A stretch of 64,000 nucleotides of DNA, from contig NC_091291.1 in the NCBI RefSeq assembly GCF_032444005.1, forward strand, positions 134,726,001 to 134,790,000. Direction: 5' to 3'. Positions 23,762 to 60,930 of the stretch are shown here, piece after piece. Origin of the DNA: Ranitomeya imitator. Lineage: Eukaryota. Both the position numbers and the translations under genes were made by a program. The notes beneath the pieces were generated by a model. It worked only from the letters and a program-made list of their open reading frames with translations, did not search any database and was not told the origin of the DNA. Each line of letters starts with the position of its first letter. Position 1 is the first letter of the stretch.

Positions 23762-23849
23762 ATGTATCTCGGCATAGTCCTGCTCATATTCTCCTACTTG
23801 GAGCCCCATAATTGTCAGACATGTTCCCCAGCGTATGACCGTCTACCGG
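23762..23849 (+). CDS. ZP gene A exon: signal peptide
   Basis: MYLGIVLLIFSYLEPHNCQTCSPAYDRLP; CCG G|GTAAG. Confidence 0.85.
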
Positions 23850-26800
23850 GTAAGATGAACCCTTTGAATCGGCTGCTAATCTGAGTTGGATGTTATGTGA
23901 GCAGCTTTTATGTTTTTTTTGTTGTTGTAGAAAACAGTGATATATCTGTTACGTGCGGATCCTCAGATATTCACCTGTCCATAAACATCTGCCCGGTTTA
24001 TTTTGCCAATTTTCTTCCCAATGAGCTTGCCTTGAATGGAAAACATAACTTAACGGAGTGCAAGGGTCTCATGGATATCTCAACAGATCCACCGGTCTTG
24101 AATTTCACTCTACATCTCGATGACTCTAGTAATAATACTTGTGGAAATTTCATTGACGTGAGTACTGACAGTATTAAGAAGTTAGAAGGTTTTTTTGTTT
24201 TTTTTTTTCTATACAGGAAAATGTTCAATTTATTAAAAGTTTGAGCTCAGATATAGCCGAACTAAATTTACGGGACTGATAGACATCCATCCAGGTGGTC
24301 CTATAGAAGTGTAAGGAGTGGTGTCTCAGCATGGAGGCCAGTGCTCCATTCACGCAGATGATGTTGGGATCTACAGGGTCCAAAATTATTGGACCTACAA
24401 CAAAATTAATCAATGTATAAAAAAAAAAATAGCAAATGTGTCACCTACAGCATGGATAGGTTAAATTTGTATGTAATGGACAACCCCTCTAAAGGTTTTT
24501 TCCCATGTTGGACATTGTGATTAATGTATGTAGTACGAACACCCCTTTAAAGGGGTTGTTGCATCCTTTCCAAAATGGAGTCAGCACATGCACTTAATAA
24601 TTTACAGAACCCCTATAGTAACGAAGGGGGGAGCCGAGCATGTACGGACACCACTCTGCTGGCAACAGGACCCAGTGATTGAGGTATAACCGGAGGAATC
24701 ATGTGGATAGGCCAGAAATGTCCGAGATGGGTCTACCCCATCATACTGGACATACAATAACACACCCCAGAGAGCTGTGGTGCATACGTGTGCCGAACGT
24801 ATAATAGGCTATCAACTCTTCAAAGGATAAGTGATTTATGTGCAGATCAGCAAGGTCCTGACTGCTGGGAATCCCCATAGACCCTGATAAAGGGGCTCTG
24901 AAATGCCAGTCACCGTCATTCCATTCATCCTCCCTAGGTCTGCCGGATATAACCAAGCACAGAACGGTACTGAACAAATCGCACAAATTCATTTCAGTGC
25001 CCATTTTTCAGCAGTGGTCAGAGCTCCACCGATCTGCAAGTTATCCTTTAGGTGGTTGTTATAGATTTTATATTGGAATTCTTTAATATGACTCTTTGCC
25101 TCCACAGATTATAAATGAGGTTGGCGTAGGTCAATTCAGTGCCTATTCAAATGTCCAAGCAGTCAGCATCTCGGGATTTGTGGATTCATTGCCAATAGCC
25201 GAAATGGGACTTGTGTCCTACAGCACAAATCTATACTACAACTTCTCCTGCCACTACCCGCTGCAGTACATATTAAACAACACCGAGCTGCTAACGTAAG
25301 TATGTGGACACGTTTTATTTATTATGCTCTTATGTCGAGGAGTATGGGGAGTGCATTATACTATGTTGAGGACTATGGAGAGTGCCTTATACTATATGGA
25401 GAACTATGGGGAGTGCATTATACTCTTATGGAGGACTATGGAGAGTGCCTTATACTATATGGAGAACTATGGGGAGTGCATTATACTCTTATGGAGAACT
25501 ATGGGGAGTGCATTATACTATATGGAGAACTATGGGGGGTGCATTATACTCTATGGATGACTATGGGGATACATTATACTGTATGGAAGAGTTTGAGCAG
25601 TGCATTCTACTATATGGAGGACTATGGGGAGAGCATTATACTATAGGGAGTGCATTATACTCTATGGAGAACTATGAGGAGTGCATTATATTCTATGGAT
25701 GACTATGGAGGTGCATTATACCATATGGAGGACTATGACAACTTTGCAGGGGTAGTTGAGGTGGGGTACAGTAGGGTCATCATACTGTGCATGTGGAGGG
25801 TACTGTGAAGGAATTCACTGTGGGGGTATCGTACAGTGTTTGTGGAGTACTTTTGTTGGCATGTTGCAATGAAAGTGGAATCTAGGGCTTCCGTATGAGG
25901 AACACACTAGGCTGACGGGTATCTACTGTGTATAACCAGCTTTACGTTTTTTTCCTATTAAACCTTTCAATTATATCTAATCATTTCCCATAGTTCCTTT
26001 GGAGCGGTCGCCATTAACAACAACAGTGGTAGCTTCATCAGTACTCTCCGGATGGGGATTTTCACGGTATGTGGGATCAAAAGTCATCGCTAAAACTTAT
26101 CAGTAGTCTTTTTCTCTTATAATTTCTTAGATTTTACCCAAGTGTTTTTGGCAGTGTATAATTGTACGATTGTTAACTAGACCATATACATTGTTCATCA
26201 AAGGATGAAAACTTCACCACAGAAGCAACTGGAAATGGCAACACTTATGAACTGAGGAAAAAAATATACGTGCAAGTAGCCAGCAATAACACGGCTATGA
26301 GGTACAGCATGGGTTCAACTGATGAATGTGTAATTTCTTTGTTGATTTTTTAGTCACATCGTTTCATTGTCAACTATATTGTCACCAAAATGTTTCCAAA
26401 GGTATAGTTGAATAGGCTGCTCCAAAAGGTTGGGCCCATTTAGACAAGTCTATAACCGAGAACTAGAGTTCCTAGGAATCCTCAATTGTCCAATATTGGC
26501 TCGTCCAAACAAGCCAACAATCAGCTGCCGAACGAGAAAAAAGCTCGTTCAACAGGTGAGATTATTTTTAAGTTTGCCTTAGGCCTCATTCAGATGTCCG
26601 ATTTTTGTGTACGAGTGCTATCCGTGTTTTTCAAGGATAGCACTCATACCCATGATAGTCTATGGGACCATCCACAGGTCCTATTTTCTTCCACAGACCA
26701 AGTGGTCTTGGGCAAATATTGGAGCCATGTCTGATTTTGATCTGAGGGTCGGATCAAAATCGACAATGAATGTCAACAGGTCTGTAAAACAAAAATTGCA

Positions 26801-29800
26801 CTGCATTCGGATGAAATGCGAGTACAGTCCGATTTACACAAACTGTCAGAATGGAGAAGACTCAAATAACACTCTGATCAGAATAATTGGTCAGATTTTC
26901 TCGTATGTGAAAAAAATCAGACAAGAAAATGAGGACTAAAAAGTCATCATTCTTGGCAGCACATTACCCGTGTAAACAGGACATGTGCTGCCTGTATAAT
27001 ATTCTGTGTGCTGTCGGCCAGTCTATTAAGGTCTATTAAGTTACCGCCGATCAACTTGTATGTATCCAATTGGCCATCGTTTAACAGCCATGGTTGGGCA
27101 GTCTAAATGGGCCTTAACTCTACTGGTAGAAGGTGAATTTTATGTTAAGCCTGCCAAGCCATCTTGCCTCTTCAAGGTAAGTGACTCGACCAGGGCTTAC
27201 AACTTCCGTATCCTCTGACCAACTGGTTGCAAAGAACGCACCTCCTGACAACCCTATGGAAAAGACTGGTTATTAGCCAGTTTATCCCTAGGAAGCAGTT
27301 TGTCCAACAAGATCTAGCAGAGGCAGCCAAACCTTGATTGGGTACATGGAGCAGTTCTCAAAACTAAAACCGTGACTAAATCTACGATAAGTAGATGGTT
27401 TCCACTGACCGTGAAATCGTAGTGTTTTGGACCTGGCACAACACTATGGCTTCTACTGCCCAAGGCTGTGTTCACATGTGTAGTAGTTATCTCCATCTTT
27501 TGACAAACAGAAATATAATGATTCAGTATAGGACCCATTCATTTGAATGAGGATCGAAAAGTCCTAAGAGGTCTTGACTGCAATCCAGCTAAAATCCAAC
27601 CAAAAACAGTTAGCAACTGGATCCATTTTTTTTCAACAGTGAAACATTTGTGTTTTGGGGAAATTAATCTTAATGGAAGGTCATCTGTAAAGTCATCCAT
27701 TAACGGATCAATTATTTTAGCACTGTGCATGCTCTCAGGTAGGCATTAGTTAGCGTTCACATGGGCAATACGATTTTGTCCAAACATGCAGTTTTATTAC
27801 TTTCATAAAACTCCAAGGGATTCAAACAGAACAACCTCATCTGGGCACAAAGGTATTACAGCAAATAAACAGATCATTCATCAGGCACATATCACATATA
27901 TCACTGTGGGCTAACCCAAACAGATTACAGTCCTTTCTCCAGGAGCAAACTTTACACACAGAAGAGGTAGTGTCTTACCAGCCTCGGTATCACCTTCAAC
28001 CTGAGCACCAGCAGTTTCCAGCCCCAAACAGAAGTGTTCAACTCCATACACAGCACACACTAAACAGACTGCAGCTGCCATAAGTTACTCTGCAGCTCCA
28101 ACACACAGACTGCTCAGCTTTCCTAGCTGACCTGAGCAGTCTGCATTCAGAGAGAGACCTAAGCTTGTCTCTCTCCCAGCTACAGCTCACATTTTGGCTG
28201 GTCACTCACCAGCTTCAACACACTCGACTATGCTCAACATCGCCAGCAGACTGAGATCTACCAGGTGAGCACATGCCTTGGTTCTTAGTCAAAGCTAGCC
28301 AAGTGTATCGAATCAGGACATAGTGCTAGAATTTAACCAACTACTACCTGGCTTTCTAACTATACCTGGAACACTAGAAAGGTGCAGAGACTCCTCTAGT
28401 AAAAACAGATCCGTTACAAATAAAACAAAAAGGTATGTAAAACGGAAACCAAAGTGTGCATCCGGAGAAGTGAACAGAGGCTAATCATCATAGATCGGTA
28501 TCTGCATAGCGTTTCACTGTATTTGCAAAGATATTATATATGTTGGGCATAAATGTTGTAAATAAAATTGTGCTAATTTTTTAAACTTTTTGAGAATTTG
28601 TCTAAACAAAATCAGGTTAGAAAATCTTCTGCTGATTCCCTGTATTTGATATTAACTGTATGACAATTTTGCACAATTACTCTACAAATCCTTTTTTATT
28701 TTTGTTTTATTTCTAGCTACTATGTTAATCTGGATGAATGTTTCGCCACACCTGGTCCTATTATCACAACTGTGGGAAATGATAGCTACTCTTTCTTCAC
28801 AGGGTAATGTAATGCCTGTTTCCAGAGTTAAACTAAGTAGACTGTAGTTTCTATTGTACTGGAGACATTACCTAATCTATGTATTTCATCTTGATTCATT
28901 ACAGCTGTAACAAACAAAACAAGACGACCATTATTCAAAATGGGCAAGCCACGACTGCAAAATTCAGTTTTGAGGCATTCCGATTTCTGCAGCACAGTGG
29001 CCAGAAAACGTCGTCAATATATCTGCACTGCTTCACCCGCCTCTGTCTGGCTGATCAATGTGCTGTAAGGGATCTTCTATTGGATCATACTTATGTAATA
29101 GGGACATAAATCTCAGGTCTACATTATCCACATATGTTGCTCATATCTATAAGGAGAAACAACCCTAGAAAAATGGACTTATATATAAATATCAGACAAA
29201 GTATATTGAATATAAAATTGCCTTTATTAAATACACATTGGCAAACGGTAATACTAATTAAAAAGAAAAATGTGCACGCGTCTGGACAATTTCTCCAGCA
29301 AAAATGTATATCAATTATATAAAGGTTTTAAGAAATCCTAAAATAGAAATCGGACCAAAGGATAATATAATTTATATCTGTATTGCTGACAAATATATAA
29401 TGATATAAGAGCCCCCCCCAAATAAAAATATGATGCTTAAGAAATTTTATGGATTCATGAAATCATAAAAAATCCTAAAAAATGTTTGTAGTTGTCAAAC
29501 TCATTTAAATAACAAATCTCAACGTAATATATAGTGCAAAAAGCGCATAGTTATCATTAGGAATAAAACTTGATAGATGGGACTTAACTCACAGTGAATG
29601 GCAAGAAAGTGAAACAAAAACTTCACCATTAATGTGGATCCATATTGGATTGTGAGGGTGCAGTAATGCAAACAAAAAAATCCCACAAATATATAAGGGC
29701 AATTCTGGGGCAATATATCTTTAAGGTCCGGTTCCGGGAGAGTCACAGACAACGCAAACACCCCGACGCGTGTTTTATATTCAATATACTTTGTCTGATA

Positions 29801-32800
29801 TTTATGTATAAGTCCATTTTTCTGGGGTTATTTCTGCTCTTCTTCTTGAGTGGTTATCACTCTTTGTCACAAACACTTTCTGGCTATCACTGTTATTGAA
29901 ATATATATATACATGCTTATATTTCTATGATTTAATTTGTGTATACCCATTAAGTGTTGTTTTACTCATATCTATAAGCAGTCAAGTCAGGTGCATTTTT
30001 AGTGTTTTTCACCAGAATTACCGGCATACACCAAGGCCCCTGTAAATGAAAAAGTATACACATGTTCACTAGGTTTCCCCACATACAAAATATAAGCGGA
30101 AAATATAAAAAATGTCCAGTTTTAGAACAATATAGAACAGCGATTCTTATAGCCTGTGTATATAGTTTTGCATTTTAGGTATAGCAGTATTTTACAAAAT
30201 GGGAAAATGCTGATAGAAATGTTTTACCAACATCCATATTTCCTGTCTAGAAATGCAGCGGCTCACGAAAAAGGAGAGAAGCTAATGCTAATAAAGAGCA
30301 GGTGATGGTTTCATCCGGACCCCTCTATGTAACAGGTACATGTCTGCAACTGAGATTAAAGGGGACCCATCACTTTTAGGACTCCAAACCACAACGTTTA
30401 GCTGACAGTGCCGCTCCCTTGCTTTCTAAAGGTGCCATAGCAGATTCTGGATTTTGCTTAGGGAGAACTTTATCTCCCCTGTATGTATAACAATAATGTT
30501 TTTGTAGTAAAGCAGGTGGAGATGATCGGGAAAGAAATCTGACATGGTTAACGTAGCTGAAGACAAGGGCTTGTAATGACATACTGTCCTCTGGGATGTC
30601 AATCAAATTAATTGGGCAGAATTAGGGTGCAACAGTCCTCTCTCCCATTCACTGCAAGGAGGTTATTAACATACAGCATGCACAGTAATTAAAGGGACTG
30701 TCCAGGACTAAAGCCCCAAATACAATACAGATAGTTGTCGGCCAAGTGATGTTTGGGTAGTAGCTAATTTGCCCAACTGTCCCATACACAGGAGCGCTCC
30801 TGTGTTCTCTAAACAGACCTTCTGCTAGACTCCTGCCGCAGCGGACTATCTCTCGAAGGACAAAAGCAAAGTCAGTCCTAAATTGGAAATACTGGATCCT
30901 TATCTCTCCCCACAATCTTGTCGGGGACCTCTATACACCCTAGACTGTCGGACGATCTTGTGGATATTAGCGGGTTTGGCTGACAACAGTCTAATGTGTA
31001 TGGTAGTCTTAAGATCCTTAGGATAAGTCATCGGAGGGATGACATCAGACATCCGGCACCTCCACCAGTTGGCCATATCCCGGTCTTGCATCTGATGGAT
31101 GTTCATAGTGTACAGATACCATTCACATGAGGGGCACCATCAGCTAGTGATGGCAGTTTGGAGACCAAAAAGCTACTGATGAATCCTCTTGGCGGTTGGC
31201 ATCGGCGTAATAGAACATCATATGACATTATTCATAAACTTTTTTTTTGCATGAGTCACAAGTTCAGGGTCCAGTGCCCCCCGTTTGGTAAGAATTCTGT
31301 TCTGTATCTTCATTTTCAGTACAATAAATGAGGTAAAACTAAAGCCAAACAGAACAGCAGAAAACTAGGATCTTTTTTATATAAATAATTACCAGTCGGA
31401 AGCTTTTTGCGTGGATTCTTCCCACTGTTCCCTGCTGAAAAGATATGACATGTCATCTATTCGTGTCCTGGTCCAGACGCGTAACATAATCCGAAAAACC
31501 CAGGTTTCTCCACCAACCGTGTATCTTTCATCCACTAAATTTAATTGTTTTTGCTTCCATCAGAATTTTACATTAGGAGTGTTCCCCGACATTTATTTCG
31601 GACTGAAGTCTCCTTCGCAGGCCACTGCATGTGCATAGAGGATCATACATTGGCACATTGACTCCCATAGTAAAAAAAAGTAACTTTTTACTGTGTCCCT
31701 ATATACAAAAACCCTAAAGAAATGTAAAACAGATGACATAGTAAAAAAAAAAGGTGTGTGTTCACGCTTTTTCATAGAAGAACTTGGGCACCATGGTTTG
31801 AGAACGACTGGAACTTCTGCCCTTATCAGTTACCAATACTTCTCATCTCAATTTTCATCATTTCTAAGGTTACTTGAACACTTTTGGTAATTTTTCTGAT
31901 AGTTTCTGCTGCATCTGCTCAATGCCAATTTCAGGGAAGAGGTGGCTAAAATTCCCTGGAATAGAAGGCACTCTAAATGGCACTTGTGATTGGCTTTTTT
32001 GATTTACTTTTGTTTTATTAAAGGAGTTTTTCTTTCACTCCACCCTTGAAAATTGCCCACTGTGCCTAGTATTTATGTACTTTTAACCTTAATCATGACC
32101 ATTTGTAATTCGTGGCATCCCTAGCTGTACTGGATTGGTTTCCTGAAAGAAACTATACAGAAAAAAATATCCCATTTTTTTTCCCCCTAGTTATTCATAG
32201 GAAATGTTAATTTCTAATTGGCTACTAAGATACAACAAAGCATCTGCGTAATAAAATAAAACTCGGCATGATATTGTCTTTTATCTGTTTTGCAGGGGAA
32301 ACGGGTGAATGGTCTGGATTTAACAGTGGTGGTATGTGTTCCTCTATGTACAGGTCCTTCTCAAAAAATTAGCATATAGTGTTAAATTTCATTATTTACC
32401 ATAATGTAATGATTACAATTAAACTTTCATATATTATAGATTCATTATCCACCAACTGAAATTTGTCAGGTCTTTTATTGTTTTAATACTGATGATTTTG
32501 GCATACAACTCCTGATAACCCAAAAAACCTGTCTCAATAAATTAGTATATTTCACCCATCCAATCAAATAAAAGTGTTTTTTAATAACAAACAAAAAAAC
32601 CAACAAATAATAATGTTCAGTTATGCACTCAATACTTGGTCGGGAATCCTTTGGCAGAAATGACTGCTTCAATGCGGCGTGGCATGGAGGCAATCAGCCT
32701 GTGACACTGCTGAGATGTTCTGGAGGCCCAGGATGCTTCAATAGCGGCCTTAAGCTCATCCAGAGTGTTGGGTCTTGCGTCTCTCAACTTTCTCTTCACA

Positions 32801-34337: not shown

Positions 34338-34364
34338 CTCTAAAATGTCTTTAATGTTGCCGTA

Positions 34365-34495
34365 AATAAATGACTAAGAGTGCACAAAGCGTATAATGAT
34401 GATACATAAATTACAAGGATTGCGTACAATGATAGACCGCTGATTGTAAAAATTGTAAAAAAATATTGTAAACTGTATGATTCCTGTGTAATAAA
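34365..34495 (+). terminator. Candidate poly(A) signals of ZP gene A
   Basis: AATAAA at 34365-34370 and 34490-34495. Confidence 0.5.
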
Positions 34496-35419
34496 GCACA
34501 GATTAAACATGGCTGAATATCGGGTCTGCTTCGTTCTTCCCACGTGTAAGAATAATGAATTGAATGATGCACAATGTGACCAACAAATACATCAAAATTG
34601 TCAAACTGTTATATTGTAAAGCGTTATTCCCAACATATAAAATAATCACCTGTGCATAGGACAGGTGGTAATAAATGGTGGATCAGTGGGTGTCCGAATG
34701 CAGGGAACCCCAACGAGTCCAAGAACGAGGGTTTGAAATGTGCATTTGCAGAATCACTCCTTTCATTATTTGTGTGTGCCAGAGATGGCCAAGTGTGGTC
34801 ACCTCTGTATTTCAGATAATTTCCCTCTTTGTCTTACTTACTCTGTCCTATCTAGATCCGCAACCTTTGCGAGTTATAAACTCTAGGCTGCTCTGCTAGG
34901 CATCCTGACCATGAACCCGTCTCCAATTGTCACTCTGTTCTTTTGGTCACTTATTTTGCTCTTTCCGCTAGGATCTCGCTATCTCTCAGCTTGGTCTCCT
35001 TTTACAGTTTGGACACCCTTGTCATGCGGCACTGATCACAATAGACCTTAGGTCTTCTTTCTATGCACACTGGGCCCTTTCCAACCTCCTAACAGGAAAA
35101 AACCTCTATCCCTTCAGCTTGCCCTTCCTACTCTGGGCTAGTCCCAACCATTAACTCTTACTTTTCCACTGTCAAAAATACATCATTAAAGGGAACCTCT
35201 CAGCAGGATTGTGCTGAGTAACCTACACACACTGTTAGGTTGGCACCGTTATACTGATTAAAATGATACCTTGTTTGATTAAATGCATCTTGTGGTTGTT
35301 GTTTAATCTTTATTCTCAGTTTTTAGTTAATGATTTGCTCGTGCTTCAGGGTTGGGCTGTGGGGGGTCTTCATGTGGTGCTCTGATTAGCTATCCATCAG
35401 TATGGCTTCTGACAGGTCA

Positions 35420-36328: not shown

Positions 36329-36330
36329 TA

Positions 36331-36396
<66 letters not shown>

Positions 36397-36400
36397 CATA
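36329..36400. repeat. (TG)n(TA)n microsatellite
   Basis: Directly visible dinucleotide run between two Tc1-type elements. Confidence 0.95.
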
Positions 36401-36402
36401 CA

Positions 36403-39125: not shown

Positions 39126-39184
39126 TAGTGAATGGATCTCTTGGGGGTTTCATCTGTCATGTCACTTGGAGATTTAGATGGAAA

Positions 39185-45385: not shown

Positions 45386-45399
45386 CGTTTCTTATAACG

Positions 45400-48323: not shown

Positions 48324-48417
48324 ATGATTACACTTGTGGTTCTTCTACTTGGTTTAGCCGGGAAAGAATGTCTTGGAAACTACTTAAACTGCTCATCCCT
48401 TTATGCTCGATATCCAG
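48324..48417 (+). CDS. ZP gene B exon: signal peptide
   Basis: MITLVVLLLGLAGKECLGNYLNCSSLYARYP; CCA G|GTTAG. Confidence 0.88.
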
Positions 48418-51400: not shown

Positions 51401-54400
51401 CAGGGTCTTGTTAGTATCAAAACATCAGGTCACTGATCCTCCTCTTCCCCTTGTTTCTTCTTTTCTTCCGACCATGATGTCCTTCTCCAGTGATTGCTCT
51501 CTTTGTATGATGTGTCCAAAGTAACATAGTAACATAGTAACATAGTTAGTAAGGCCGAAAAAAGACATTTGTCCATCCAGTTCAGCCTATATTCCATCAT
51601 AATAAATCCCCAGATCTACGTCCTTCTACAGAACCTAATAATTGTATGATACAATATTGTTCTGCTCCAGGAAGACATCCAGGCCTCTCTTGAACCCCTC
51701 GACTGAGTTCGCCATCACCACCTCCTCAGGCAAGCAATTCCAGATTCTCACTGCCCTAACAGTAAAGAATCCTCTTCTATGTTGGTGGAAAAACCTTCTC
51801 TCCTCCAGACGCAAAGAATGCCCCCTTGTGCCCGTCGCCTTCCTTGGTATAAACAGATCCTCAGCGAGATATTTGTATTGTCCCCTTATATACTTATACA
51901 TGGTTATTAGATCGCCCCTCAGTCGTCTTTTTTCTAGACTAAATAATCCTAATTTCGCTAATCTATCTGGGTATTGTAGTTCTCCCATCCCCTTTATTAA
52001 TTTTGTTGCCCTCCTTTGTACTCTCTCTAGTTCCATTATATCCTTCATTAGCACCGGTGCCCAAAACTGGACACAGTACTCCATGTGCGGTCTAACTAGG
52101 GATTTGTACAGAGGCAGTATAATGCTCTCATCATGTGTATCCAGACCTCTTTTAATGCACCCCATGATCCTGTTTGCCTTGGCAGCTGCTGCCTGGCACT
52201 GGCTGCTCCAGGTAAGTTTATCATTAACTAGGATCCCCAAGTCCTTCTCCCTGTCAGATTTACCCAGTGGTTTCCCATTCAGTGTGTAATGGTGATATTG
52301 ATTCCTTCTTCCCATGTGTATAACCTTACATTTATCATTGTTAAACCTCATCTGCCACCTTTCAGCCCAAGTTTCCAACTTATCCAGATCCATCTGTAGC
52401 AGAATACTATCTTCTCTTGTATTAACTGCTTTACATAGTTTTGTATCATCTGCAAATATCGATATTTTACTGTGTAAACCTTCTACCAGATCATTAATGA
52501 ATATGTTGAAGAGAACAGGTCCCAATACTGACCCCTGCGGTACCCCACTGGTCACAGCGACCCAGTTAGAGACTATACCATTTATAACCACCCTCTGCTT
52601 TCTATCACTTAGCCAGTTACTAACCCATTTACACACATTTTCCCCCAGACCAAGCATTCTCATTTTGTGTAGCAACCTCTTGTGCGGCACGGTATCAAAC
52701 GCTTTGGAAAAATCGAGATATACCACGTCCAATGACTCACCGTGGTCCAGCCTATAGCTTACCTCTTTATAAAAACTGATTAGATTGGTTTGACAGGAGC
52801 GATTTCTCATAAACCCATGCTGATATGGAGTTAAACAGTTATTCTCATTGAGATAATCCAGAATAACATCCCTCAGAAACCCTTCAAATATTTTACCAAC
52901 AATAGAGGTTAGACTTACTGGCCTATAATTTCCAGGTTCACTTTTAGAGCCCTTTTTGAATATTGGCACCACATTTGCTATGCGCCAGTCCTGCGGAACA
53001 GATCCTGTCGCTATAGAGTCCCTAAAAATAAGAAATAATGGTTTATCTATTACATTACTTAGTTCCCTTAGTACTCGTGGGTGTATGCCATCCGGACCCG
53101 GAGATTTATCTATTTTAATCTTATTTAGCCGGTTTCGCACCTCTTCTTGGGTTAGATTGGTGACCCTTAATATAGGGTTTTCATTGTTTCTTGGGATTTC
53201 ACCTAGCATTTCATTTTCCACCGTGAATACCGTGGAGAAGAAGTAGACAGGTCATAGTGGTGAATTTGATCCTTGCTTCGAGTGACACCCTGTACCAATA
53301 TTTTGGTGCCAATTACTGATGCAAAGTAAGCCAAATAATAGGTGGTGTAAACTTAGAGTACAGACAGTCTAGAGAGGCGCCAGATTTATCATAGTCTTTC
53401 ATGCTGGCTAATCATTTTGACTCCTCTTTAATCTACGTTTACGCCACCTATTATTTGGCTTAATTTTGGGCCAACATTTTATGCCAAAATGTTGACCCTT
53501 TTTGTGATGTTCGCACTGTTGGAGTTTTGACCGTGCCCATTTCCTTCAAACAATAGGATTAAAATAGCCGCGCTCGTAGGTGAACGCAAATACTAGAAAG
53601 TTTTATGTACAATAGTCACCACACTAAGAAATATATTACAATAGGTGATGGTTCAGGAGATAGAATTATGCAACGTTTCGACCCAATCCTGAGTCTTTTT
53701 CAAGCATTGCTAGAAGAAATGTACACAAGCATTGGGGTGTCATATGAACGAAACAAAAACAAAACATACAAACCAAACATACAGAGATATGTAATTAATA
53801 CAGCTTTTTTTTGTAAATTGTTATGTTGGATTAGTCCAGGTCTGCCGGCACCAACCCACCGTTCTGAGCGCGCACCTTTTCTGTAAACCCCACCACTTGT
53901 ATGGTGAAGTTCTCCCACCACTCGTCAGACATGATGCAGGAAGTGCCTAAAGCAAATCATAATTTCAGAGTAAATCATGGAAAACAATTTTTTTGGGTAA
54001 ATGTTATACGGACCCCAGTGATGGACATCGACTCTCTCATTTTATCAATCAAGCAAATTATGACAAAGAGATGTGAATGCAAGACAAGTGTGGAAGTGAA
54101 TAATACTAATATCAATATTTTATTGGCAGCTCTTCAGCTAATGTTGCTGTCAACACGAATAACGGCACCTTCATCAGCACCTTGAGTATGCAATTATTCA
54201 TTGTAAGTATTTAACCCCAGAAACCTAATTGTGACACTTCTTCCTGTTCTATTAGTAAATTATTATTTATTTTTGTCCTTCCCTACAGCAATTTGATCTC
54301 CCCAGGTAGTAGATAATTGGCAATTAATTTTATACTCCACACCGTTAACTAAGAATATTTATTTCTGTAATATTTTTCATTGGACAACCCCTCTAAATGT

Positions 54401-57400
54401 TCTTTTTATGTCAGAGTCTTTTTTAATGACTTGTGTCGTTTTTTTCTTCTTTAGATTGATTGTTAGATTTTTTCTTATCATTTTTGGCTTCTGTCTTTTC
54501 TTTTATAGAATCTAGATCTCTAAGTTTTCTATCTTTCATTACTAAGTTGATCTCACGATAGTGGGCCATTGCCCCCAAAAACGAGGACTCTTAACCGTTT
54601 TTTGGCTTTTCGTTTGCAAGGCCCTGCTTGTGATCCAAGCTCCAAGCCAAGAGTGGTGGTGAAAAAAAACTGAAATTGCAGAGACATAGGATTTTTATAT
54701 GTGTTTGCCTATTTTTTTTTTTTTAAGTTTCAATTTTTTAATTATTTCAATTCTGATTCAGCATTTGAACATTTTCGAAAAAGTCGTACAATTTGTTGAA
54801 AATTTACTCCGGTCCACCTAAGTACAATGTTTGTTTTCATGCAAGTTCAGTTCAATTTGACGAAAAGTTACAAAGAAGGTTAAAGACAAAAAAGGGACCG
54901 TTTTAGACTTTACGCAAAATTTGTGAAAAGATATTGGTGCAATAAATGGCAAAGAATATCACAACACAAAAATAGAAAAGTGATTAAAATTTTTTTGCAC
55001 ATGATGAGTCGGGGCCATCGTCAGTTTAGTTTGATCATTTGGTGCGAAATCAATATAATATATCAATGTATTTTCTTATAGGATGAAAATTTCACCGTTC
55101 CTCTGCAATTTAATGGCAGTGCCCTCTCACTGAAAAAGAATGTGTATGTGCAAGTGACAGCAACGAACCTCACTGCCAAGTAAGCAAGGGCCACATGATC
55201 ATGGACCAAACTGATAATATGTTGTTTACTGGTAGGAATGAGCGGACTCATGGAAGTCCAGGTTCTAGTGCCGGATCGAACTTTATTTCGAAGTTCGGTC
55301 TCCGTACCAGAACAGTACCCAAACTTAAACCAGAACCTGAACCCCATTGAAAGTGGTTGGAAAAAATAGTTCTCTCTTCTCTCCCTTCTGTCTCTTCTCC
55401 CTCTCCTGCTCCCTCTTAAAACTGACCTGGAAATATTATTCTCCAGGCCAGTGTGAGTACGCAGACACCAAACATGTATAGTTTTTTTTTAGTTAAGTGG
55501 TTAAAAAATTTTGAAAAAAATTTGTAATTTTTTTTTTTTTGCTTTTGTCGTCATTTTCCGAGACCCGTAATGTTTTTATTTCTCGTGATCGGGTGTTATC
55601 CGAGTATCTTGGGTGTGCTCATATTATATGTTCGATCTTATCCGATCATGTTCGATCATCACTATTGACAACTCATCGGTGCCCCGGGATCATGTCACGG
55701 TCAGGCCGACGGGAGAGTGGACCGACGTGATTGACAGTGGCGTTTAGCAGGCTAACAGCCATGAGTGGAGCTGCACTTCTTCCGTGCTTTTAGAGGCACA
55801 TGATGGCGGATATAATCAGCCATCATGAGCGGTGAGAGATGTGGGTTTGGTGTGAGAGTCTATTTAAAAGGCAGGGACAGGGACACGACACATTTCATAA
55901 GTTTATGTCGTATGTTGTGAAGGGATTAATGATGCAATATTCAATAATACAAGCAAAAAGAAGAAACAATGTAATGTTTCTTATCGGAGAAATATGCTTC
56001 TTCCTTCATTTTTGAGCCACCTGGTCTCCTCTCCTTCAATAACTCATCACTCACTCTGAAAATCCAACTTGCTCAAGATAAGATAGATTAGAAACTCACT
56101 GAGGTATCAGATTACTGCAGCCCACTAAAGTATACAGAGGGAGGATAATGAGAAAATTAGGGCAGGCAAAGTCAGACAGGCAGGGCTTGCTGGACCTTTG
56201 TAGTAAGTGATTAGCTTATCCTAGTGTTGGATTCACAGCTACACTGCTCAGTACTGTTGTATAATGTCCTCCATGCTGCTGCTGCTGCTGCTGCTTCTGA
56301 ACATGTGCTACATAGAGACAGGAGAGCAGGAATCCCTCATGTCCGTGTGTTCTGTGTATGGGGGACATGAGAACAGCTTATCTCCATCCACGAGATCACA
56401 GACAGCTGAAAATTAAAGATAGTACCTGCAGAGGGGAAACTGGTGAAAAATAGAGGATACAATGACCGGTTATAGGGTTATTCCTCATGCACACAGACAT
56501 AATGGCCTATTCTGAAAAGATTTTCTTTCTTATTTTTTAGCTTCTATGTCCATCTGGATGAATGTTTCGCCACTCCGTCACCATTGTTGACAACTGACGT
56601 TGCAAGCAAGTTCTCTCTGCTGTCAGGGTAAGCATTCATGCATTAATGTGAGAATAAGCACCTGATATAAATGTTCTTCATATTCCCTAATTACTCCTTC
56701 TCCCCTCAGGTGTAGCACTGCCAACAAGACTAAAGTACTGTCCAATGGACTCGGAAAATCAGCTCAGTTCTCATTTGAGACGTTCCGTTTCTTGCAACAC
56801 AGCGGTCAGCCTACGTCTACCATCTACCTGCACTGCGCCACCAGACTGTGTCAGCCTGACACCTGCGCAGCCATTAATCAGGTAGCTAGGCGGTATTATA
56901 GAAATCCACCATAAGGAAAAGGAAGCTGCTGCCAGACACCTGGTTTAAAAAGAAAAAAAATCAGCCATGTTGAAACCCAACATGCCCAGTCCTAGACACA
57001 GGAATATGTATGACCTTAATGGTCGTCCCACAAACAACATTTATCACCTATCTATGGGGCACATAATAAGTGTACGATCTGCCTGATTAGACCCCACTGA
57101 TCCAATGACCGGGGAGTCCAAGGTATGGAGCTGAAGTGTGCATGTGCGGCCCTCAGCTCTATTAACAGTCAACATAGCAGTGGTCGCACATGTGCACTAC
57201 TACTCCATTCACACAGAGGATATTGGGACCCCTAATCATGATTGTGGGGGTCTCATTGCCCCTGATATCCACCATTGGTGTTATGGGCTCATCTGATGAG
57301 GTGGATTTGCTAAGTCATAGATAAGGGTGAGCAGCACGGACCAGAGGTGTTAGAGCAGCACGGACCAGAGCAGCTGGGTCTGCAGGATGGGTTTCATCTC

Positions 57401-60400
57401 ATTATATAAAATATCAGCAGCAGCATTATCTATATGACCAGTGAAAAGTCTCGTAATAAACAGCACAATAATAGTGAGTTACATATAAAGCCAGACGCAG
57501 CTCTAAATGGTATTCTGTATATGCAACATCAGGCGTGTAATGCTGTGTCCGCCACATCGGCTGCACCCAGTTCACAAAGGAGGAGGAGAGCGGCGGAGGT
57601 GTCAGCATCAGAAGGGACGACAGAAAGTGTCACCGTGTCTTCTGGCCCCATAACTACCAGGGATGAAGNNNNNNNNNNNNNNNNNNNNNNNNNNNNNNNN
57701 NNNNNNNNNNNNNNNNNNNNNNNNNNNNNNNNNNNNNNNNNNNNNNNNNNNNNNNNNNNNNNNNNNNNNNNNNNNNNNNNNNNNNNNNNNNNNNNNNNNN
57801 NNNNNNNNNNNNNNNNNNNNNNNNNNNNNNNNNNNNNNTTTTCTATCTCTTTCTTTCCTTCTGTCACTCTTTCTTTCTTTCNNNNNNNNNNNNNNNNNNN
57901 NNNNNNNNNNNNNNNNNNNNNNNNNNNNNNNNNNNNNNNNNNNNNNNNNNNNNNNNNNNNNNNNNNNNNNNNNNNNNNNNNNNNNNNNNNNNNNNNNNNN
58001 NNNNNNNNNNNNNNNNNNNNNNNNNNNNNNNNNNNNNNNNNNNNNNNNNNNNNNNNNNNNNNNNNNNNNNNNNNNNNNNNNNNNNNNNNNNNNNNNNNNN
58101 NNNNNNNNNNNNNNNNNNNNNNNNNNNNNNNNNNNNNNNNNNNNNNNNNNNNNNNNNNNNNNNNNNNNNNNNNNNNNNNNNNNNNNNNNNNNNNNNNNNN
58201 NNNNNNNNNNNNNNNNNNNNNNNNNNNNNNNNNNNNNNNNNNNNATTTGTCTCATTCTTTCTCTCCCTTTTTATCTCTTGGTCTCTTTCTTTTGTTCTTT
58301 CTCTTTGTCTTTCTATCTAATTTTGTCTATTTCTTTCCCTCTTTCTTTCTTTCCTTTTTTCAAACATTTGACTGCCCCAAAAATCCCCCAAATCTCCAAC
58401 AATCCGCAGTGCTGAGGAATGTTGCTTCCTGAGATAAACATCTGTAAGTTTGAGATATAACGTAACTGTAGAACATTAAGCCCCCGTCACACAAAGCGAG
58501 ATCGCTAGCGAGATCGCTGCTGAGTCACAAGTTTTGTGACGCAACAGCGACCTCAGTAGCGATCTCGCTATGTGTGACATGTAGCAGCGACCAGGCCCCT
58601 GCTGTGAGATCGCTGGTCGTGTCGGAATGGCCTGGACCTTTTTTTGATCGTTGAGGTCCCGCTGGGTAGCACACATCGCTGTGTTTGAAACCTTACCAAC
58701 GACCTCATGACAGGATGTCCCTCATTGAGGTCTGTTTATCGTCATGAAATAGCTGTTATGTGACATCGTTGTACAGGTCGCTACAGGTCGCCGCATCGCT
58801 GCTGCGTCGTTGGGGAGATCTCACAGTTTGACATCTCACCAGCGACCACATAGCGACGCAGCAACGATCCCTGACAGGTCGTATCGTTGTCGGGATCGCT
58901 TTAGCGTCACTAAGTGTGACGGGGCCTTTAGAATGCTGAGAGTCAGAATGAAATATGTTATTCAATAAATACATTTCCACAAGGAAAAGCTGAGGAACAG
59001 CACAACACAAAGCACAGATTAGTGACAAAGCAAGTATTTTCCGTGGGCAAACAAGTATTTGCTAAAACATACATATAAGGAGAGAGCAAAGGTCCTGTGT
59101 TACTGCTGGTGGCAGGACGTATCTCCGTGTGAAATGTAGGCTCTCCGCTAACTTCTCCTGGTTCTTCCACTTTGTATAGTTCTCTGCTTTCGTGTCCACT
59201 TCTTGCATCACAGGAAATGATAAAATAGGTAATTGTTTTATGTTGTTTGCTAAATTGTTATATAATCGCACCTAATTTCCTTATTTTTGTAGAATCCACT
59301 GGGAGTCACCCCAGCGGTGAGTATCCTCACATATTACCTACTTATGTCCTCTACAATTCTAGCGCTTCCAGTTTCATCTGTGCACCAGAGCTTCAGGGCC
59401 ACCCTGCAATATTAGAGAGGAGCATTACTATAAGTGGCCACAACGAAATATCATGGGTAATGTGCAAATTGTCTCTTCAGAGAGGAAAAGCGCCACCTAT
59501 TGCAAGTAGCAATACTAAAAGTCAATATCGACCCTTTAACAAGACACATGACTTACAATAAAAGCTAAACCAAAATCTCAATTTCCAGGCACATGTTTCG
59601 GGGTTTTGCTACTCTTCAGTGCAAAGCAAGATATCTGATTTGGCTGTATAAAATGTCTCTGACCGGGGTCTAAGCAGTCATGTTTCTTCTTGCGGAGAGT
59701 GACATGCCTGGTAAGGACTCTTATAGGTAGTGCACAGGCATTCAGTTCTCCATGGCCCAAAACTTCAGAAAAAATTCTGATTCACCAGAACCTGAATATT
59801 TTATGATTCAATTCGCTCAAATCAAGAACAATGGCATCCGTCTGGCACTGACCAGGGCTCAAGTAACGTCATTAAGGTGCCGAAGAGCAAAATAATGGAA
59901 GAGAAAACTGGACTTGGATGGAGGAAGCAAACAAGTTGAGGACTGGGCAGGGAGCGCTGGACCTAGGCAAACATGGGGGAGAGGGGAGTATAATATATTT
60001 TTAAAGACCTTTATTTATTATGCTCTAGAGTCTGGAGAGACCTCAGAACGTAACAAAAAAGTTATTCCAGTGATTCTATTTGCGCCAAAAAATGGTTTTT
60101 CACGTGGCCTCCACCAAGCTTGCTGGGCTCCTTCCTGTGGATTCTGAGCGAATGGCAACGTGTTCTGCCGAGTGATGTGGAGGGTGTACCGTTCAGAGCA
60201 CAATGACAGCCGAATGGCACACAATTTCGGCTAGTCATACACGACGACATGTATCCGCACGATTTGGGATCACAATGTTGCACGGACATGCCGCAAGATG
60301 CATTGTGCAAGATGCTGCGTCCGTGACCCGACACTCGTCAGAAGGCCAACCTTGCTGGATTTCTCTGTGACCCCATTCACTGCTTGCGCCCTCACCTCCA

Positions 60401-60930
60401 TCGTTTCAGCACATTTTGCTTCGGCGCTCTCTGTCGGGATTGTAAAAGATGAGTTCTAACGTCAAACATCTGGTGATGCACCGTTCTGGTCTCATGACCG
60501 CTGCGACAAATCACTGGCCCTAGAGGTCAGGTGACTGGAGAATTGGACATCATCTCTTGCGGTACCGATGGAGACCTCCGGAGCAGTCTGCCCTGGAGTG
60601 CCGGAAGTATAAGTGGGTGGATATTCCTCATTTTTGAATTGTATCTTATTTTATCCATTATCTGCCTACAGAGTGATGTATGTTAGGGTCAGACGACCCT
60701 CGTTAACTGTTCACATTAATGAAGATTAATCTTCGATTTTTCTCTTCCCAGGCGTTTCTGAAGTCAATCAGCTTCATGGGACGCTAACGGGACTCATCGT
60801 TGGAATCATCATTGCCGCTTTGCTGGGGGTAGCCCTCGCCATTGCCAGCCTGATTTTTTACAAAATGTCCCGACTCCGGAGTCAGAATAATAAGAGCGGG
60901 GTGGACAACTTCTCCTACACTGGGAAATAG
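48324..60930 (+). CDS. ZPLD1/cupulin-like ZP-module type I membrane protein B, 425 aa; join(48324..48417,48541..48767,50928..51115,54130..54202,55082..55179,56541..56627,56710..56881,57533..57668,59293..59316,60752..60930)
   Basis: Signal peptide MITLVVLLLGLAG; same ZP cysteine pattern and exon phases as gene A; furin site RRRR; EHP VTVSSGPITT; TM GLIVGIIIAALLGVALAIASLIFY; tail ending DNFSYTGK*; 1278 nt open. The donor after 57668 is hidden by Ns. Confidence 0.9.
48541..48767 (+). CDS. ZP gene B exon: ZP-N first part
   Basis: 227 nt, DSDIMVNCG...ACGNNIA|GTAAGT. Confidence 0.92.
49170..49844. mobile_element. Solo LTR (675 bp) with 5-bp TSD in ZP gene B intron
   Basis: TTGGG|TGTCATG...CATGACA|TTGGG. 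Confidence 0.85.
50928..51115 (+). CDS. ZP gene B exon: ZP-N second part
   Basis: 188 nt, IEDDVG...FSCYYPLQYFLNNTELL. Confidence 0.92.
51521..53245 (-). mobile_element. 5'-truncated CR1 LINE with uninterrupted RT-encoding ORF, antisense in ZP gene B intron
   Basis: 528-aa ORF 51635..53221 ([39 protein letters not shown]); 3' (TATGTTAC)n octamer tail at 51521-51546; no endonuclease domain. Confidence 0.93.
53668..53707 (-). ncRNA. Penelope-type minimal type I hammerhead-like motif (U3-A8 variant core)
   Basis: Minus strand AUGC UUGAAAA A GACUCA ggau UGGGUC GAA AC GU U GCAU: stem I, stem II and palindromic stem III (AACGUU) all formable. Confidence 0.5.
54130..54202 (+). CDS. ZP gene B exon: linker/IHP
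   Basis: 73 nt, SSANVAVNTNNGTFISTLSMQLFI|GTAAGT. Confidence 0.92.
55082..55179 (+). CDS. ZP gene B exon: ZP-C start
   Basis: 98 nt, DENFTVPLQFNGSALSLKKNVYVQVTATNLTA. Confidence 0.92.
56541..56627 (+). CDS. ZP gene B exon: ZP-C (DECFATP)
   Basis: 87 nt, FYVHLDECFATPSPLLTTDVASKFSLLS. Confidence 0.92.
56710..56881 (+). CDS. ZP gene B exon: ZP-C end
   Basis: 172 nt, CSTANKT...FETFRF...LHCATRLCQPDTCAAINQ. Confidence 0.92.
57533..57668 (+). CDS. ZP gene B exon: furin site and EHP
   Basis: ACNAVSATSAAPSSQRRRRAAEVSASEGTTESVTVSSGPITTRDE; 3' end abuts the N run. Confidence 0.85.
57669..58244. other. Two N runs (57669-57838, 57882-58244) in a CT-rich tract
   Basis: Uncalled or masked bases flanked by (TTTC/CT)n low-complexity sequence. 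Confidence 0.95.
58479..58927. mobile_element. T2/Kolobok-like MITE
   Basis: tta|agcccccgtcacac...gtgtgacggggcct|tta; CG-rich internal repeats. Confidence 0.7.
59293..59316 (+). CDS. ZP gene B 24-nt micro-exon (phase 1-1)
   Basis: TTGTAG|AA TCC ACT GGG AGT CAC CCC AGC G|GTGAGT. Confidence 0.7.
60150..60600 (+). mobile_element. Probable very degenerate Tc1 remnant
   Basis: CpG-rich tract with decayed similarity to Tc1 coding sequence (gactggagaattgg...catctc near the W..VIFSD region). Weak. Confidence 0.35.
60752..60930 (+). CDS. ZP gene B last exon: TM helix and cytoplasmic tail
   Basis: CCCAG|GC GTT...AAA TAG; GLIVGIIIAALLGVALAIASLIFY KMSRLR...DNFSYTGK*. Confidence 0.9.

What the first reader, a model, noticed from the sequence alone, without database searches (positions are those of the whole stretch)
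23762..60930. Tandem pair of divergent ZPLD1/cupulin-like ZP genes: a candidate two-component extracellular filament locus
Seen: two same-strand genes with identical exon phases and five identical exon lengths (227, 188, 73, 98, 87 nt). They conserve all ZP-N/ZP-C cysteines plus the ZPLD1-type extra pair (pre-ZP Cys and NICP/NACP), a furin site, an EHP and about 10 N-glycosylation sequons each. By eye they are only roughly half identical and their introns do not align, so the duplication is old and both frames are intact. Known: ZP modules polymerise into extracellular matrices (egg coat, cupula, tectorial membrane, uromodulin), often as heteropolymers; the exon layout matches ZPLD1 as I recall it. 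Inference: these are not the ZPLD1 orthologue but a separate, possibly amphibian-expanded subfamily that may co-polymerise in skin, larval epidermis, lateral-line cupula, oviduct or egg coat.
Basis: partly seen in the sequence, partly recalled or inferred. Interest (0 to 1): 0.72.

Follow-up and report, generated by a model that had tools for sequence, protein, structure and literature searches.

The report
Tandem ZPLD1-like matrix genes in frog
Two neighbouring, intact and transcribed poison-frog genes encode filament-forming ZP (zona pellucida module) proteins; they are old paralogues of the inner-ear cupula protein ZPLD1, not ZPLD1 itself, and belong to an unstudied family seen only in fishes and amphibians.

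Summary
The window is Ranitomeya imitator. Gene A (23762-34337, 371 aa) and gene B (48324-60930, 425 aa) lie on the + strand. Each has 10 coding exons with identical phases, and five exon lengths are identical (227/188/73/98/87). Each has one micro-exon that I first missed. Both N runs lie in intron 8 of gene B, so no coding letter is hidden and the frame closes.

The products equal RefSeq XP_069597181.1 and XP_069597091.1, both auto-named "ZPLD1". They are only 35-38% identical to the true, highly conserved ZPLD1, which sits on another chromosome. In trees they fall in a fish/lungfish/amphibian sister family (si:dkey-103g5.3 type), with no amniote member among the hits.

The A/B duplication predates crown frogs. 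The order BTG gene, then A, then B is shared with Xenopus. Both copies are under purifying selection (dN/dS 0.23 and 0.33).

Four RNA runs that hold gene A exon words also hold correctly spliced gene B. One ranid run holds full-length transcripts of both types.

Co-polymerisation and tissue remain untested. Zebrafish relatives mark lateral-line neuromast support and mantle cells, which makes the neuromast cupula the best guess. Verdict: a real, annotated but uncharacterised pair, of moderate interest.

The parts
23762..23849 (+). Gene A exon 1: start codon, signal peptide, pre-ZP Cys (88 nt)
   Evidence: The joined product equals P0413.
23931..24157 (+). Gene A exon 2: ZP-N first half (227 nt)
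   Evidence: Pfam ZP-N; AG/GT splice sites.
25108..25295 (+). Gene A exon 3: ZP-N second half (188 nt)
25994..26066 (+). Gene A exon 4: linker and probable internal hydrophobic patch, GSFISTLRMGIF (73 nt)
   Evidence: Strands E170-191 in the AF2 model.
26204..26301 (+). Gene A exon 5 (98 nt)
28717..28803 (+). Gene A exon 6: ZP-C (87 nt)
28905..29064 (+). Gene A exon 7: ZP-C core (160 nt)
   Evidence: Pfam Zona_pellucida.
30251..30335 (+). Gene A exon 8: furin site RKRR (30266-30277) and EHP VMVSSGPLYV (30302-30331) (85 nt)
32296..32331 (+). Gene A exon 9: 36-nt micro-exon (GETGEWSGFNSG)
   Evidence: It is needed for identity with XP_069597181.1. D. tinctorius has the same 36-nt exon.
34264..34337 (+). 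Gene A exon 10: short hydrophobic C-terminus without a cytoplasmic tail (possible GPI-type signal), stop TGA (74 nt)
48324..48417 (+). Gene B exon 1: start codon, signal peptide, pre-ZP Cys (94 nt)
48541..48767 (+). Gene B exon 2: ZP-N first half (227 nt)
   Evidence: Pfam ZP-N.
50928..51115 (+). Gene B exon 3 (188 nt)
   Evidence: The loose end of RNA contigs before 54130 reads the end of this exon.
54130..54202 (+). Gene B exon 4 (73 nt)
   Evidence: RNA joint 54202>55082 in 4 runs.
55082..55179 (+). Gene B exon 5 (98 nt)
   Evidence: RNA joints in 4 runs.
56541..56627 (+). Gene B exon 6 (87 nt)
   Evidence: RNA joints in 4 runs.
56710..56881 (+). Gene B exon 7: ZP-C core (172 nt)
   Evidence: Pfam Zona_pellucida. 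RNA joint to 57533 in 2 runs.
57533..57668 (+). Gene B exon 8: furin site RRRR (57578-57589) and EHP VTVSSGPITT (57629-57658). 136 nt; the donor is hidden by the first N.
   Evidence: D. tinctorius has the same 136-nt exon.
57669..58244 (.). Two assembly gaps (57669-57838 and 57882-58244) with a 43-nt CT-rich island between them, all inside intron 8 of gene B
59293..59316 (+). Gene B exon 9: 24-nt micro-exon (ESTGSHPS)
   Evidence: AG/GT splice sites. D. tinctorius has the same 24-nt exon.
60752..60930 (+). Gene B exon 10: transmembrane helix and conserved cytoplasmic tail (...KSGVDNFSYTGK), stop TAG (179 nt)

Best explanation
These are two intact, transcribed, anciently duplicated tandem paralogues in Ranitomeya imitator. 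They belong to a 'ZPLD1-like' ZP-module family, the fish si:dkey-103g5.3 clade, which is the sister family of ZPLD1/cupulin. Members were found only in fishes and amphibians.

Shown here:
- Each gene encodes a precursor made of a signal peptide, a short N-terminal piece with a Cys, ZP-N, a linker, ZP-C with 10 module cysteines plus 2 extra, a furin-type site, an external hydrophobic patch and a membrane anchor.
- B keeps a transmembrane helix and a conserved cytoplasmic tail.
- A, in hyloid frogs, ends in a short hydrophobic segment with no tail, which may be a GPI-type signal.

Inferred from solved relatives (UMOD, ZP3/ZP1, ZPD): cleavage at the furin site releases the hydrophobic patch, and the ectodomains assemble head-to-tail into extracellular filaments.

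Inferred, with lower odds:
- The two products are laid down together in one apical matrix of an aquatic life stage, most likely the lateral-line neuromast cupula (about 0.35).
- They form mixed rather than separate filaments (about 0.25).
For: Gene models and frames. The products are identical to RefSeq P0413 and P0496.

Domains and fold:
- ZP-N and ZP-C by Pfam.
- 12 conserved Cys columns.
- The AF2 model of the gene A product has pLDDT 75.7. Its best fold matches are the UMOD polymerisation region, the ZPD filament, UMOD filaments, ZP3, ZP3/ZP1 and GP2.

Not ZPLD1:
- 35-38% identity to R. imitator ZPLD1.
- True ZPLD1 is 75-81% conserved from shark to lizard.
- The clades are separate (100*).
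- ZPLD1 is on a different chromosome.

Age of the duplication: anuran A clade 99/94 and anuran B clade 100/99, both including Ascaphus; Ambystoma groups with A at 100/92.

Synteny:
- X. laevis has BTG, then A-like, then B-like on the same strand, 12 kb apart.
- D. tinctorius has A then B on the same strand.
- Gene tags or accessions are adjacent in X. laevis, bullfrog and R. imitator.

Selection: dN/dS is 0.23 (A) and 0.33 (B) against D. tinctorius.

Expression:
- Runs X1-X4 hold 11-16% of the gene A stretch's words; the expected exon share is 13%.
- The same four runs hold spliced gene B contigs with my exact joints.
- Ranid run SRR16937528 carries full-length A-type and B-type transcripts.

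Cupula lead:
- si:dkey-4p15.5 is a top neuromast support-cell marker (bioRxiv 10.1101/2025.09.30.679639).
- si:dkey-103g5.3 is enriched in a neuromast branch together with mantle-cell markers (PMC6363392 supplementary file 7).
Against: - No protein-level or localisation data exist for any member of the family.
- The tissue and stage of runs X1-X4 and of the ranid runs are unknown. Sample-level co-occurrence could come from different cell types.
- The strongest neuromast marker (si:dkey-4p15.5) belongs to the other branch of the family (clade X), not to the A/B branch.
- The zebrafish gene names reach my tree only through names projected onto medaka, Myripristis, Paramormyrops and Latimeria proteins.
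- Absence from amniotes rests on hit lists that also miss X. tropicalis.
- The GPI signal of A was judged by eye only.
- 10-Cys ZP proteins such as UMOD, GP2 and ZPD form homopolymers, so a partner is not required.
Confidence: 0.78

Rival explanations
1. A and B do not co-polymerise. They are subfunctionalised paralogues that each build homopolymers (or act as membrane-bound ZP proteins) in different cell types, stages or sub-layers of a matrix. Their different anchors give them different trafficking and release.
For: - Both carry 10 ZP-module cysteines. The closest folds include the homopolymers UMOD, GP2 and ZPD.
- The anchors diverged: A is tail-less in Hyloidea, while B keeps a transmembrane helix and a conserved tail.
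- Identity is only 52%.
- The family duplicated independently in lungfish and probably in a caecilian, as ordinary tandem duplication would.
Against: - Both transcripts occur in the same four R. imitator runs and in one ranid run.
- Both copies are retained in about 20 anuran species.
- None of this excludes separate filaments.
Confidence: 0.45
2. One of the two genes is the frog ZPLD1 (cupulin) gene and the other its recent copy, as the RefSeq product names suggest.
For: [quoted passage not shown]
- They share the 12-Cys pattern and the 10-exon, same-phase layout with ZPLD1.
Against: - A separate ZPLD1 (XP_069616298.1) exists in the same species on another chromosome. It is 81% identical to lizard ZPLD1.
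- A and B are 35-38% identical to it.
- True ZPLD1 forms a 100%-supported clade that excludes A and B.
Confidence: 0.02
3. The pair serves reproduction or skin (egg coat, oviduct or jelly, larval or adult epidermal mucus layer, olfactory or oral epithelium) rather than the lateral line.
For: - ZP-module proteins are typical of egg coats and apical matrices.
- Four other R. imitator runs lack gene A words, so expression is tissue- or stage-restricted.
- The tissue of the positive runs is unknown.
- Neuromast cell sorting in zebrafish does not exclude expression elsewhere.
Against: - From my own knowledge, the well-studied Xenopus egg-envelope components (ZPA, ZPB, ZPC, ZPD, ZPAX) are not of this family.
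- The nearest characterised relative, ZPLD1, is a sensory-organ matrix protein (PMC4219815).
- Fish relatives are neuromast markers.
Confidence: 0.3
4. Gene A is decaying: a copy that lost its anchor and is on the way to becoming a pseudogene.
For: - A lost the cytoplasmic tail and part of the transmembrane segment in Hyloidea.
- A-type branches are longer than B-type branches.
Against: - The 371-codon frame is intact with canonical splice sites.
- D. tinctorius has the same 10 exons.
- dN/dS is 0.23.
- The tail-less C-terminus is conserved across hyloid families.
- Gene A exon words are present in four RNA runs.
Confidence: 0.04

Closest known systems
ZPLD1 / cupulin (major matrix protein of the semicircular-canal cupula; PMC4219815)
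   Same: - The same architecture: signal peptide, ZP module, furin site, external hydrophobic patch and anchor.
- The same 12 conserved cysteines, including the pre-ZP Cys and the extra ZP-N Cys.
- The same 10-exon gene layout and intron phases, with exon lengths 73 and 98 identical.
   Different: - Only 35-38% identity, whereas ZPLD1 itself is 72-81% conserved across vertebrates.
- A separate clade and a separate chromosome.
- No amniote members found.
- Gene A lacks the transmembrane-plus-tail anchor.
Zebrafish si:dkey-103g5.3 and si:dkey-4p15.5 (uncharacterised ZP genes)
   Same: - Same family. Proteins carrying the projected name si:dkey-103g5.3 fall in the same branch as A/B, and si:dkey-4p15.5 falls in the sister branch.
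- Both zebrafish genes are expressed in neuromast non-sensory cells.
   Different: - The fish genes are co-orthologues of the whole amphibian A+B clade, not of either gene.
- No zebrafish sequence was in my tree; placement is by names projected onto other fishes.
- Function is unknown there too.
Uromodulin / GP2 (GPI-anchored homopolymeric ZP filaments)
   Same: - Best structural matches of the predicted gene A product (4wrn, 6tqk, 7pfp, 8xc5).
- 10-Cys ZP-C.
- Furin-type or hepsin-type release and EHP logic.
- Gene A's tail-less hydrophobic C-terminus resembles a GPI signal.
   Different: - About 18-23% identity.
- UMOD and GP2 have extra N-terminal EGF and D8C domains, whereas A and B are bare ZP modules.
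- Different tissues.
ZPD and the ZP3/ZP1 egg-coat filaments
   Same: - ZP-module fold (28yj, 8bqu, 3nk4).
- They give precedents for homopolymeric (ZPD) and heteropolymeric (ZP3/ZP1) assembly.
   Different: - Distant sequence (13-22% identity).
- A and B did not group with any egg-coat family name in the searches.

Membership tests
ZP-module (zona pellucida domain) proteins | ZP-N and ZP-C domains recognised by profile | tested here: met
   PF23344 matches exon 2 (E 4e-5 and 3e-7; gene A's score of 24.2 bits is just under the 24.7-bit cutoff). PF00100 matches exon 7 (E 6e-9 and 8e-10, above cutoff). Both domains are precomputed on the full-length products.
ZP-module (zona pellucida domain) proteins | Conserved cysteine pattern (C1-C4 in ZP-N; C5-C7, Ca, Cb, C8 in ZP-C) | tested here: met
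   All ten module Cys columns, plus the two extra ones discussed under ZPLD1, are invariant or more than 90% conserved in 74 sequences. The disulfide pairing itself could not be read, because no model coordinates are available.
ZP-module (zona pellucida domain) proteins | Consensus furin cleavage site followed by an external hydrophobic patch and a membrane anchor | tested here: met
   RKRR/RRRR, VMVSSGPLYV/VTVSSGPITT, and a hydrophobic C-terminus (A) or transmembrane helix plus tail (B). Judged from sequence; cleavage itself was not tested.
ZP-module (zona pellucida domain) proteins | ZP fold | tested here: met
   The top 35 Foldseek matches of the AF2 model are ZP modules (UMOD, ZPD, ZP3, ZP1, endoglin, betaglycan, GP2).
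ZP-module (zona pellucida domain) proteins | Polymerises into extracellular filaments | not testable with these tools
   Needs expression and electron microscopy. No multimer prediction was available.
ZPLD1 / cupulin orthologue group | 1:1 orthology to ZPLD1 in a gene tree | tested here: not met
   The ZPLD1 clade (100*) excludes A and B. R. imitator has its own ZPLD1, P0504.
ZPLD1 / cupulin orthologue group | High sequence conservation (about 70-80% from fish to mammals) | tested here: not met
   A is 34.9% and B 37.8% identical to R. imitator ZPLD1. ZPLD1 itself is 75-81% conserved.
ZPLD1 / cupulin orthologue group | Genomic location and synteny of ZPLD1 | tested here: not met
   ZPLD1 lies on an 847.7-Mb chromosome and A/B on a 150.8-Mb chromosome. 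A/B lie next to a BTG-family gene, as in X. laevis. The neighbours of ZPLD1 itself were not examined.
ZPLD1 / cupulin orthologue group | Extra cysteine pair and 10-exon, same-phase gene structure | tested here: met
   This shared ancestral feature shows family kinship, not orthology.
ZPLD1 / cupulin orthologue group | Expression in crista supporting cells and presence in the ampullary cupula | not testable with these tools
   The run metadata carry no tissue label.
ZPLD1-like family of fishes and amphibians (si:dkey-103g5.3 branch) | Falls inside the clade with coelacanth, lungfish, ray-finned fish and amphibian members | tested here: met
   The 66-row clade has 99* support and the amphibian clade 100/99.
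ZPLD1-like family of fishes and amphibians (si:dkey-103g5.3 branch) | Conserved tandem A-then-B arrangement in frogs | tested here: met
   X. laevis, D. tinctorius and the window share the order and strand. Accessions or gene tags are adjacent in bullfrog, X. laevis and R. imitator.
GPI-anchored ZP proteins (for gene A only) | C-terminal GPI signal: small omega residues, polar spacer, terminal hydrophobic stretch, no cytoplasmic tail | tested here: inconclusive
   The ending ...FNSGGTNLLTGNHAGLAVGLIVAAVIRA fits by eye and is conserved across Hyloidea. No GPI predictor was available.

The most novel reading that the evidence does not exclude
The ZPLD1-like family supplies the matrix of the lateral-line cupula, in the way ZPLD1 supplies the inner-ear cupula. 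In frogs the A (tail-less, possibly GPI-anchored) and B (transmembrane) products would co-assemble into a two-component filament in tadpole neuromasts. The family would have been lost together with the lateral line in amniotes and perhaps in direct-developing amphibians.
Probability: 0.15. Interest if true: 0.7.

Novelty: new member of a known kind. Interest (0 to 1): 0.42.

Why it matters
Public annotation gives these genes the same name as ZPLD1, which hides an old, separate ZP family found only in fishes and amphibians. I found no paper that characterises it.

The matrix protein of the inner-ear cupula is known to be ZPLD1. In zebrafish, zpld1a is not expressed in neuromasts, and I found no paper naming a ZP protein of the lateral-line cupula. 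This family offers concrete candidates, because its fish members mark neuromast support and mantle cells.

The frog pair is a natural case for asking whether a tail-less and a transmembrane ZP paralogue build one filament or two. If the tissue turns out to be ordinary skin or oviduct, the finding is a routine tandem gene pair with a misleading name.

Tried and rejected
1. My first gene models were incomplete. Gene A had 9 exons and 359 aa, and gene B seemed to run open into the gap. Comparison with orthologues showed a 36-nt micro-exon in A and a 24-nt micro-exon in B. So the idea that about 8 codons of B are hidden in the gap was rejected.

2. A PDB sequence search with exon 2 alone found nothing. 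The fold search did find matches.

3. Taking the neuromast marker si:dkey-4p15.5 as the direct fish counterpart of A/B was rejected. It lies in the other branch of the family, together with a third frog paralogue (P0292, P0293, P0084).

4. I tried to learn the tissue of the RNA runs. The run metadata are coded or empty. Paper searches for the ranid SRR numbers and the bullfrog papers gave no mapping.

5. Paper searches for a named ZPLD1-like family, or for ZP proteins of the neuromast cupula, gave nothing relevant.

6. The tail-less C-terminus itself is real and conserved.

7. Disulfide pairing of the extra Cys pair could not be tested, because model coordinates are not exposed.

8. The joined spliced models were built only inside scripts. 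Searches used exon references and the database proteins identical to the models (P0413, P0496).

9. The N runs were not filled or looked up. P0496 was compared with the visible-letter model only, and its equality was reported.

Full report
**What is in the sequence**

The window has two N runs, 57669-57838 and 57882-58244. Comparing translated fragments of the two halves of the region showed six colinear pairs of conserved coding pieces on the + strand. Pfam recognises ZP-N in the first pair and ZP-C in the last.

Reading the splice sites gave two genes with AG/GT borders, identical intron phases and five exons of identical length, 227, 188, 73, 98 and 87 nt. Each first coding exon holds a start codon, a hydrophobic signal-like N-terminus and a cysteine just before the ZP module.

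**Completing the models**

A profile of exon 2 was searched against the representative protein library. Cluster look-ups followed, then word searches with three full-length hits. These gave named relatives.

The gene A product is identical to RefSeq XP_069597181.1 of Ranitomeya imitator once a 36-nt micro-exon at 32296-32331 is added. This identifies the genome.

Gene B at first seemed to run open into the gap at 57669. Its last exon is at 60752-60930. The exon maps of the Xenopus laevis relatives showed a micro-exon before the last exon. The window has the equivalent at 59293-59316, which is 24 nt with AG/GT borders.

The ten visible exons of gene B sum to 1278 nt. They give one open frame of 425 codons with a terminal stop, identical to RefSeq XP_069597091.1.

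**The gap test**

Both N runs lie in intron 8 of gene B, and the first N is the first intron base. Only the donor dinucleotide of exon 8 is hidden. The supporting points are:
- Exon 8 is 136 nt in the orthologous gene of Dendrobates tinctorius too.
- RNA contigs cover 57528-57668 without a mismatch and continue beyond.
- The sequence beside the gaps is CT-rich low-complexity DNA.

No N was filled or looked up. The joined models were built only inside scripts and were not sent to any search tool. Searches used exon references and database proteins.

- A and B are 51.8% identical locally and 53.4% globally.
- At DNA level only 43 bases of one exon align, so the introns are unrelated.
- Twelve cysteine columns are shared with true ZPLD1, including the one before the module and the extra one in ZP-N (IN.C). 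They are invariant or nearly so in 74 sequences.
- Furin-type sites (RKRR, RRRR), an external hydrophobic patch and ten ectodomain sequons each are present.

**What the genes are**

[quoted passage not shown] True ZPLD1 is a different, very conserved gene:
- Lizard ZPLD1 is 81% identical to that of a dendrobatid frog and 75% to that of a chimaera.
- R. imitator has its own ZPLD1 (XP_069616298.1) on an 848-Mb chromosome, against 151 Mb for the chromosome that carries A and B.
- A and B are 35% and 38% identical to it.

In an 89-row maximum-likelihood tree, true ZPLD1 forms a clade with full support. The rest splits into two branches:
- One branch holds fish proteins named si:dkey-4p15.5 and a third frog paralogue.
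- The other holds coelacanth, lungfish, ray-finned fishes (named si:dkey-103g5.3) and all amphibian A-type and B-type proteins.

A careful tree of the second branch gives these supports:
- anuran A clade 99/94;
- anuran B clade 100/99, with both clades containing Ascaphus;
- Ambystoma grouped with A at 100/92, although on a long branch;
- the amphibian clade 100/99.

The duplication is therefore older than crown frogs and probably older than the frog-salamander split. Lungfish and a caecilian have pairs of their own.

No amniote member appeared in any hit list. This is weak evidence, because X. tropicalis is also missing from those lists.

**Gene structure and synteny**

X. tropicalis ZPLD1 and the X. 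laevis A-like and B-like genes have the same ten coding exons and phases as the window genes. Exons of 73 and 98 nt are shared by all. The 227 and 188 nt exons are shared by all A/B-type genes, and 87 nt is shared by all of them except X. laevis A-like, which has 90 nt. It is a shared ancestral trait.

In X. laevis a BTG-family gene, the A-like gene and the B-like gene follow each other on one strand, with 12 kb between the two ZP genes. The window has BTG exons at 18593-20081 upstream of gene A. In D. tinctorius A and B have the same order and strand, about 119 kb apart.

**Selection and anchors**

Against D. tinctorius, dN/dS is 0.23 for A and 0.33 for B. Both genes are therefore maintained.

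B-type proteins keep a transmembrane helix and a strongly conserved tail (...NGVDNF.F.GK). A-type proteins keep a helix and a short basic tail in Xenopus, Spea, Pelobates, Pelodytes, Leptobrachium, Rhinophrynus and Mixophyes. In hyloid frogs, including this one, they end in a short hydrophobic segment with no tail. This looks like a GPI-type signal, but no predictor was available.

**Fold**

The predicted structure of the gene A product has a mean pLDDT of 75.7. Its best matches are the uromodulin polymerisation region, the ZPD filament, uromodulin filaments, ZP3, ZP3/ZP1 and GP2. These include both homopolymers and a heteropolymer.

**Expression**

Four runs of one study hold 11-16% of the sampled words of 23700-29100. 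The exon share of that stretch is about 13%. Four runs of the same species from two other studies hold almost none.

The same four runs, laid on 53300-57668, carry spliced contigs with GT..AG joints that fit the exon borders I modelled for exons 4 to 8. A loose end reads the end of exon 3. Thus gene B is transcribed as modelled, in the samples that also hold gene A exon words.

In a ranid frog, full-length A-type transcripts occur in nine runs. One of them, SRR16937528, also carries a full-length B-type transcript. The tissues could not be identified.

**Mechanism**

- Shown: the precursor architecture, conservation, transcription and co-occurrence.
- Inferred from solved relatives: furin-type cleavage removes the hydrophobic patch and allows head-to-tail polymerisation.
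- Inferred with lower odds: the site of action.

ZPLD1 is the main protein of the ampullary cupula (PMC4219815; PMC7618414). [quoted passage not shown] The uncharacterised si:dkey-4p15.5 is a leading neuromast support-cell marker (bioRxiv 10.1101/2025.09.30.679639). It is detected in 94-98% of sorted neuromast cells. si:dkey-103g5.3 is enriched (46% against 18% of cells) in a branch listed together with sfrp1a, tnfb, ovgp1 and ponzr1 (PMC6363392 supplementary files). From my own knowledge of that paper, those four are mantle-cell markers.

Together with the fish-and-amphibian distribution, this makes the lateral-line cupula the best single guess, at about 0.35. Whether A and B share one filament is open, at about 0.25.

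**Verdict**

This is a real, intact, co-transcribed tandem pair. It is already present in RefSeq under a misleading name and belongs to an uncharacterised sister family of ZPLD1. It is a new member of a known kind. The interest is moderate and rests mainly on the testable link to the lateral-line cupula.

Noticed in passing
window 18593-20081 (+): A BTG-family gene lies about 3.7 kb upstream of gene A (Pfam BTG on two exons). The exons are 59-86% identical to the BTG gene that sits upstream of the A-like gene in X. laevis, so the order BTG, then A, then B is conserved. An Amia calva predicted protein fuses BTG and ZP-C domains (P0276), which hints at the same neighbourhood in a ray-finned fish.
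   Followed up: partly
window 32629-33696 (-), 42449-43471 (-), 38137-38859 (-), 35402-36152 (+): Tc1/mariner-type transposase ORFs. Two are full-length (355 aa inside gene A intron 9; 340 aa with a Sleeping-Beauty-type HTH domain between the genes). The others are fragments.
   Followed up: partly
window 51635-53221 (-): A 528-aa reverse-transcriptase ORF (LINE-type, Pfam RVT_1) inside intron 3 of gene B.
   Followed up: partly
window 34264-34409: Gene A ends in a short hydrophobic segment with no tail. This ending is shared by hyloid frogs, whereas Xenopus, Spea, Pelobates and Mixophyes A-type proteins keep a transmembrane helix plus a basic tail. R. imitator and D. tinctorius stop two codons earlier than Phyllobates (...RA* against ...AAWL*). 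No clear remnant of a lost tail is seen after the stop.
   Followed up: partly
window 54168, 57569, 57572, 57598, 57600: RNA contigs of run X2 differ from the window at these exon positions of gene B (C>G, A>G, T>C, G>T, T>G). These are probably alleles of another individual.
   Followed up: no
window 21849-21955 and 58538-58644: A short repeated element is shared between the region upstream of gene A and intron 8 of gene B (48-66% identity at the translated level).
   Followed up: no
related proteins P0292, P0293, P0132, P0084: Ranid frogs and Rhinophrynus have a third ZPLD1-like paralogue on another chromosome. It groups with the fish si:dkey-4p15.5 branch. In Rhinophrynus it lies on the same 638-Mb contig as true ZPLD1. 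Whether R. imitator has one was not checked.
   Followed up: no
hit lists: No A/B-type protein from Eleutherodactylus coqui, Microcaecilia, Geotrypetes or any amniote was listed, although true ZPLD1 of E. coqui, Microcaecilia and several amniotes was found. From my own knowledge, E. coqui is a direct developer and the two caecilians lack free aquatic larvae. X. tropicalis A/B-type proteins are also missing from the lists, so this is only a lead.
   Followed up: no
related protein P0166 (Mantella aurantiaca, 640 aa): This predicted protein covers the whole B-type query at 69% identity and matches the A-type query at 50%. It is far longer than either type, so it may be a fused model of two adjacent genes.
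   Followed up: no
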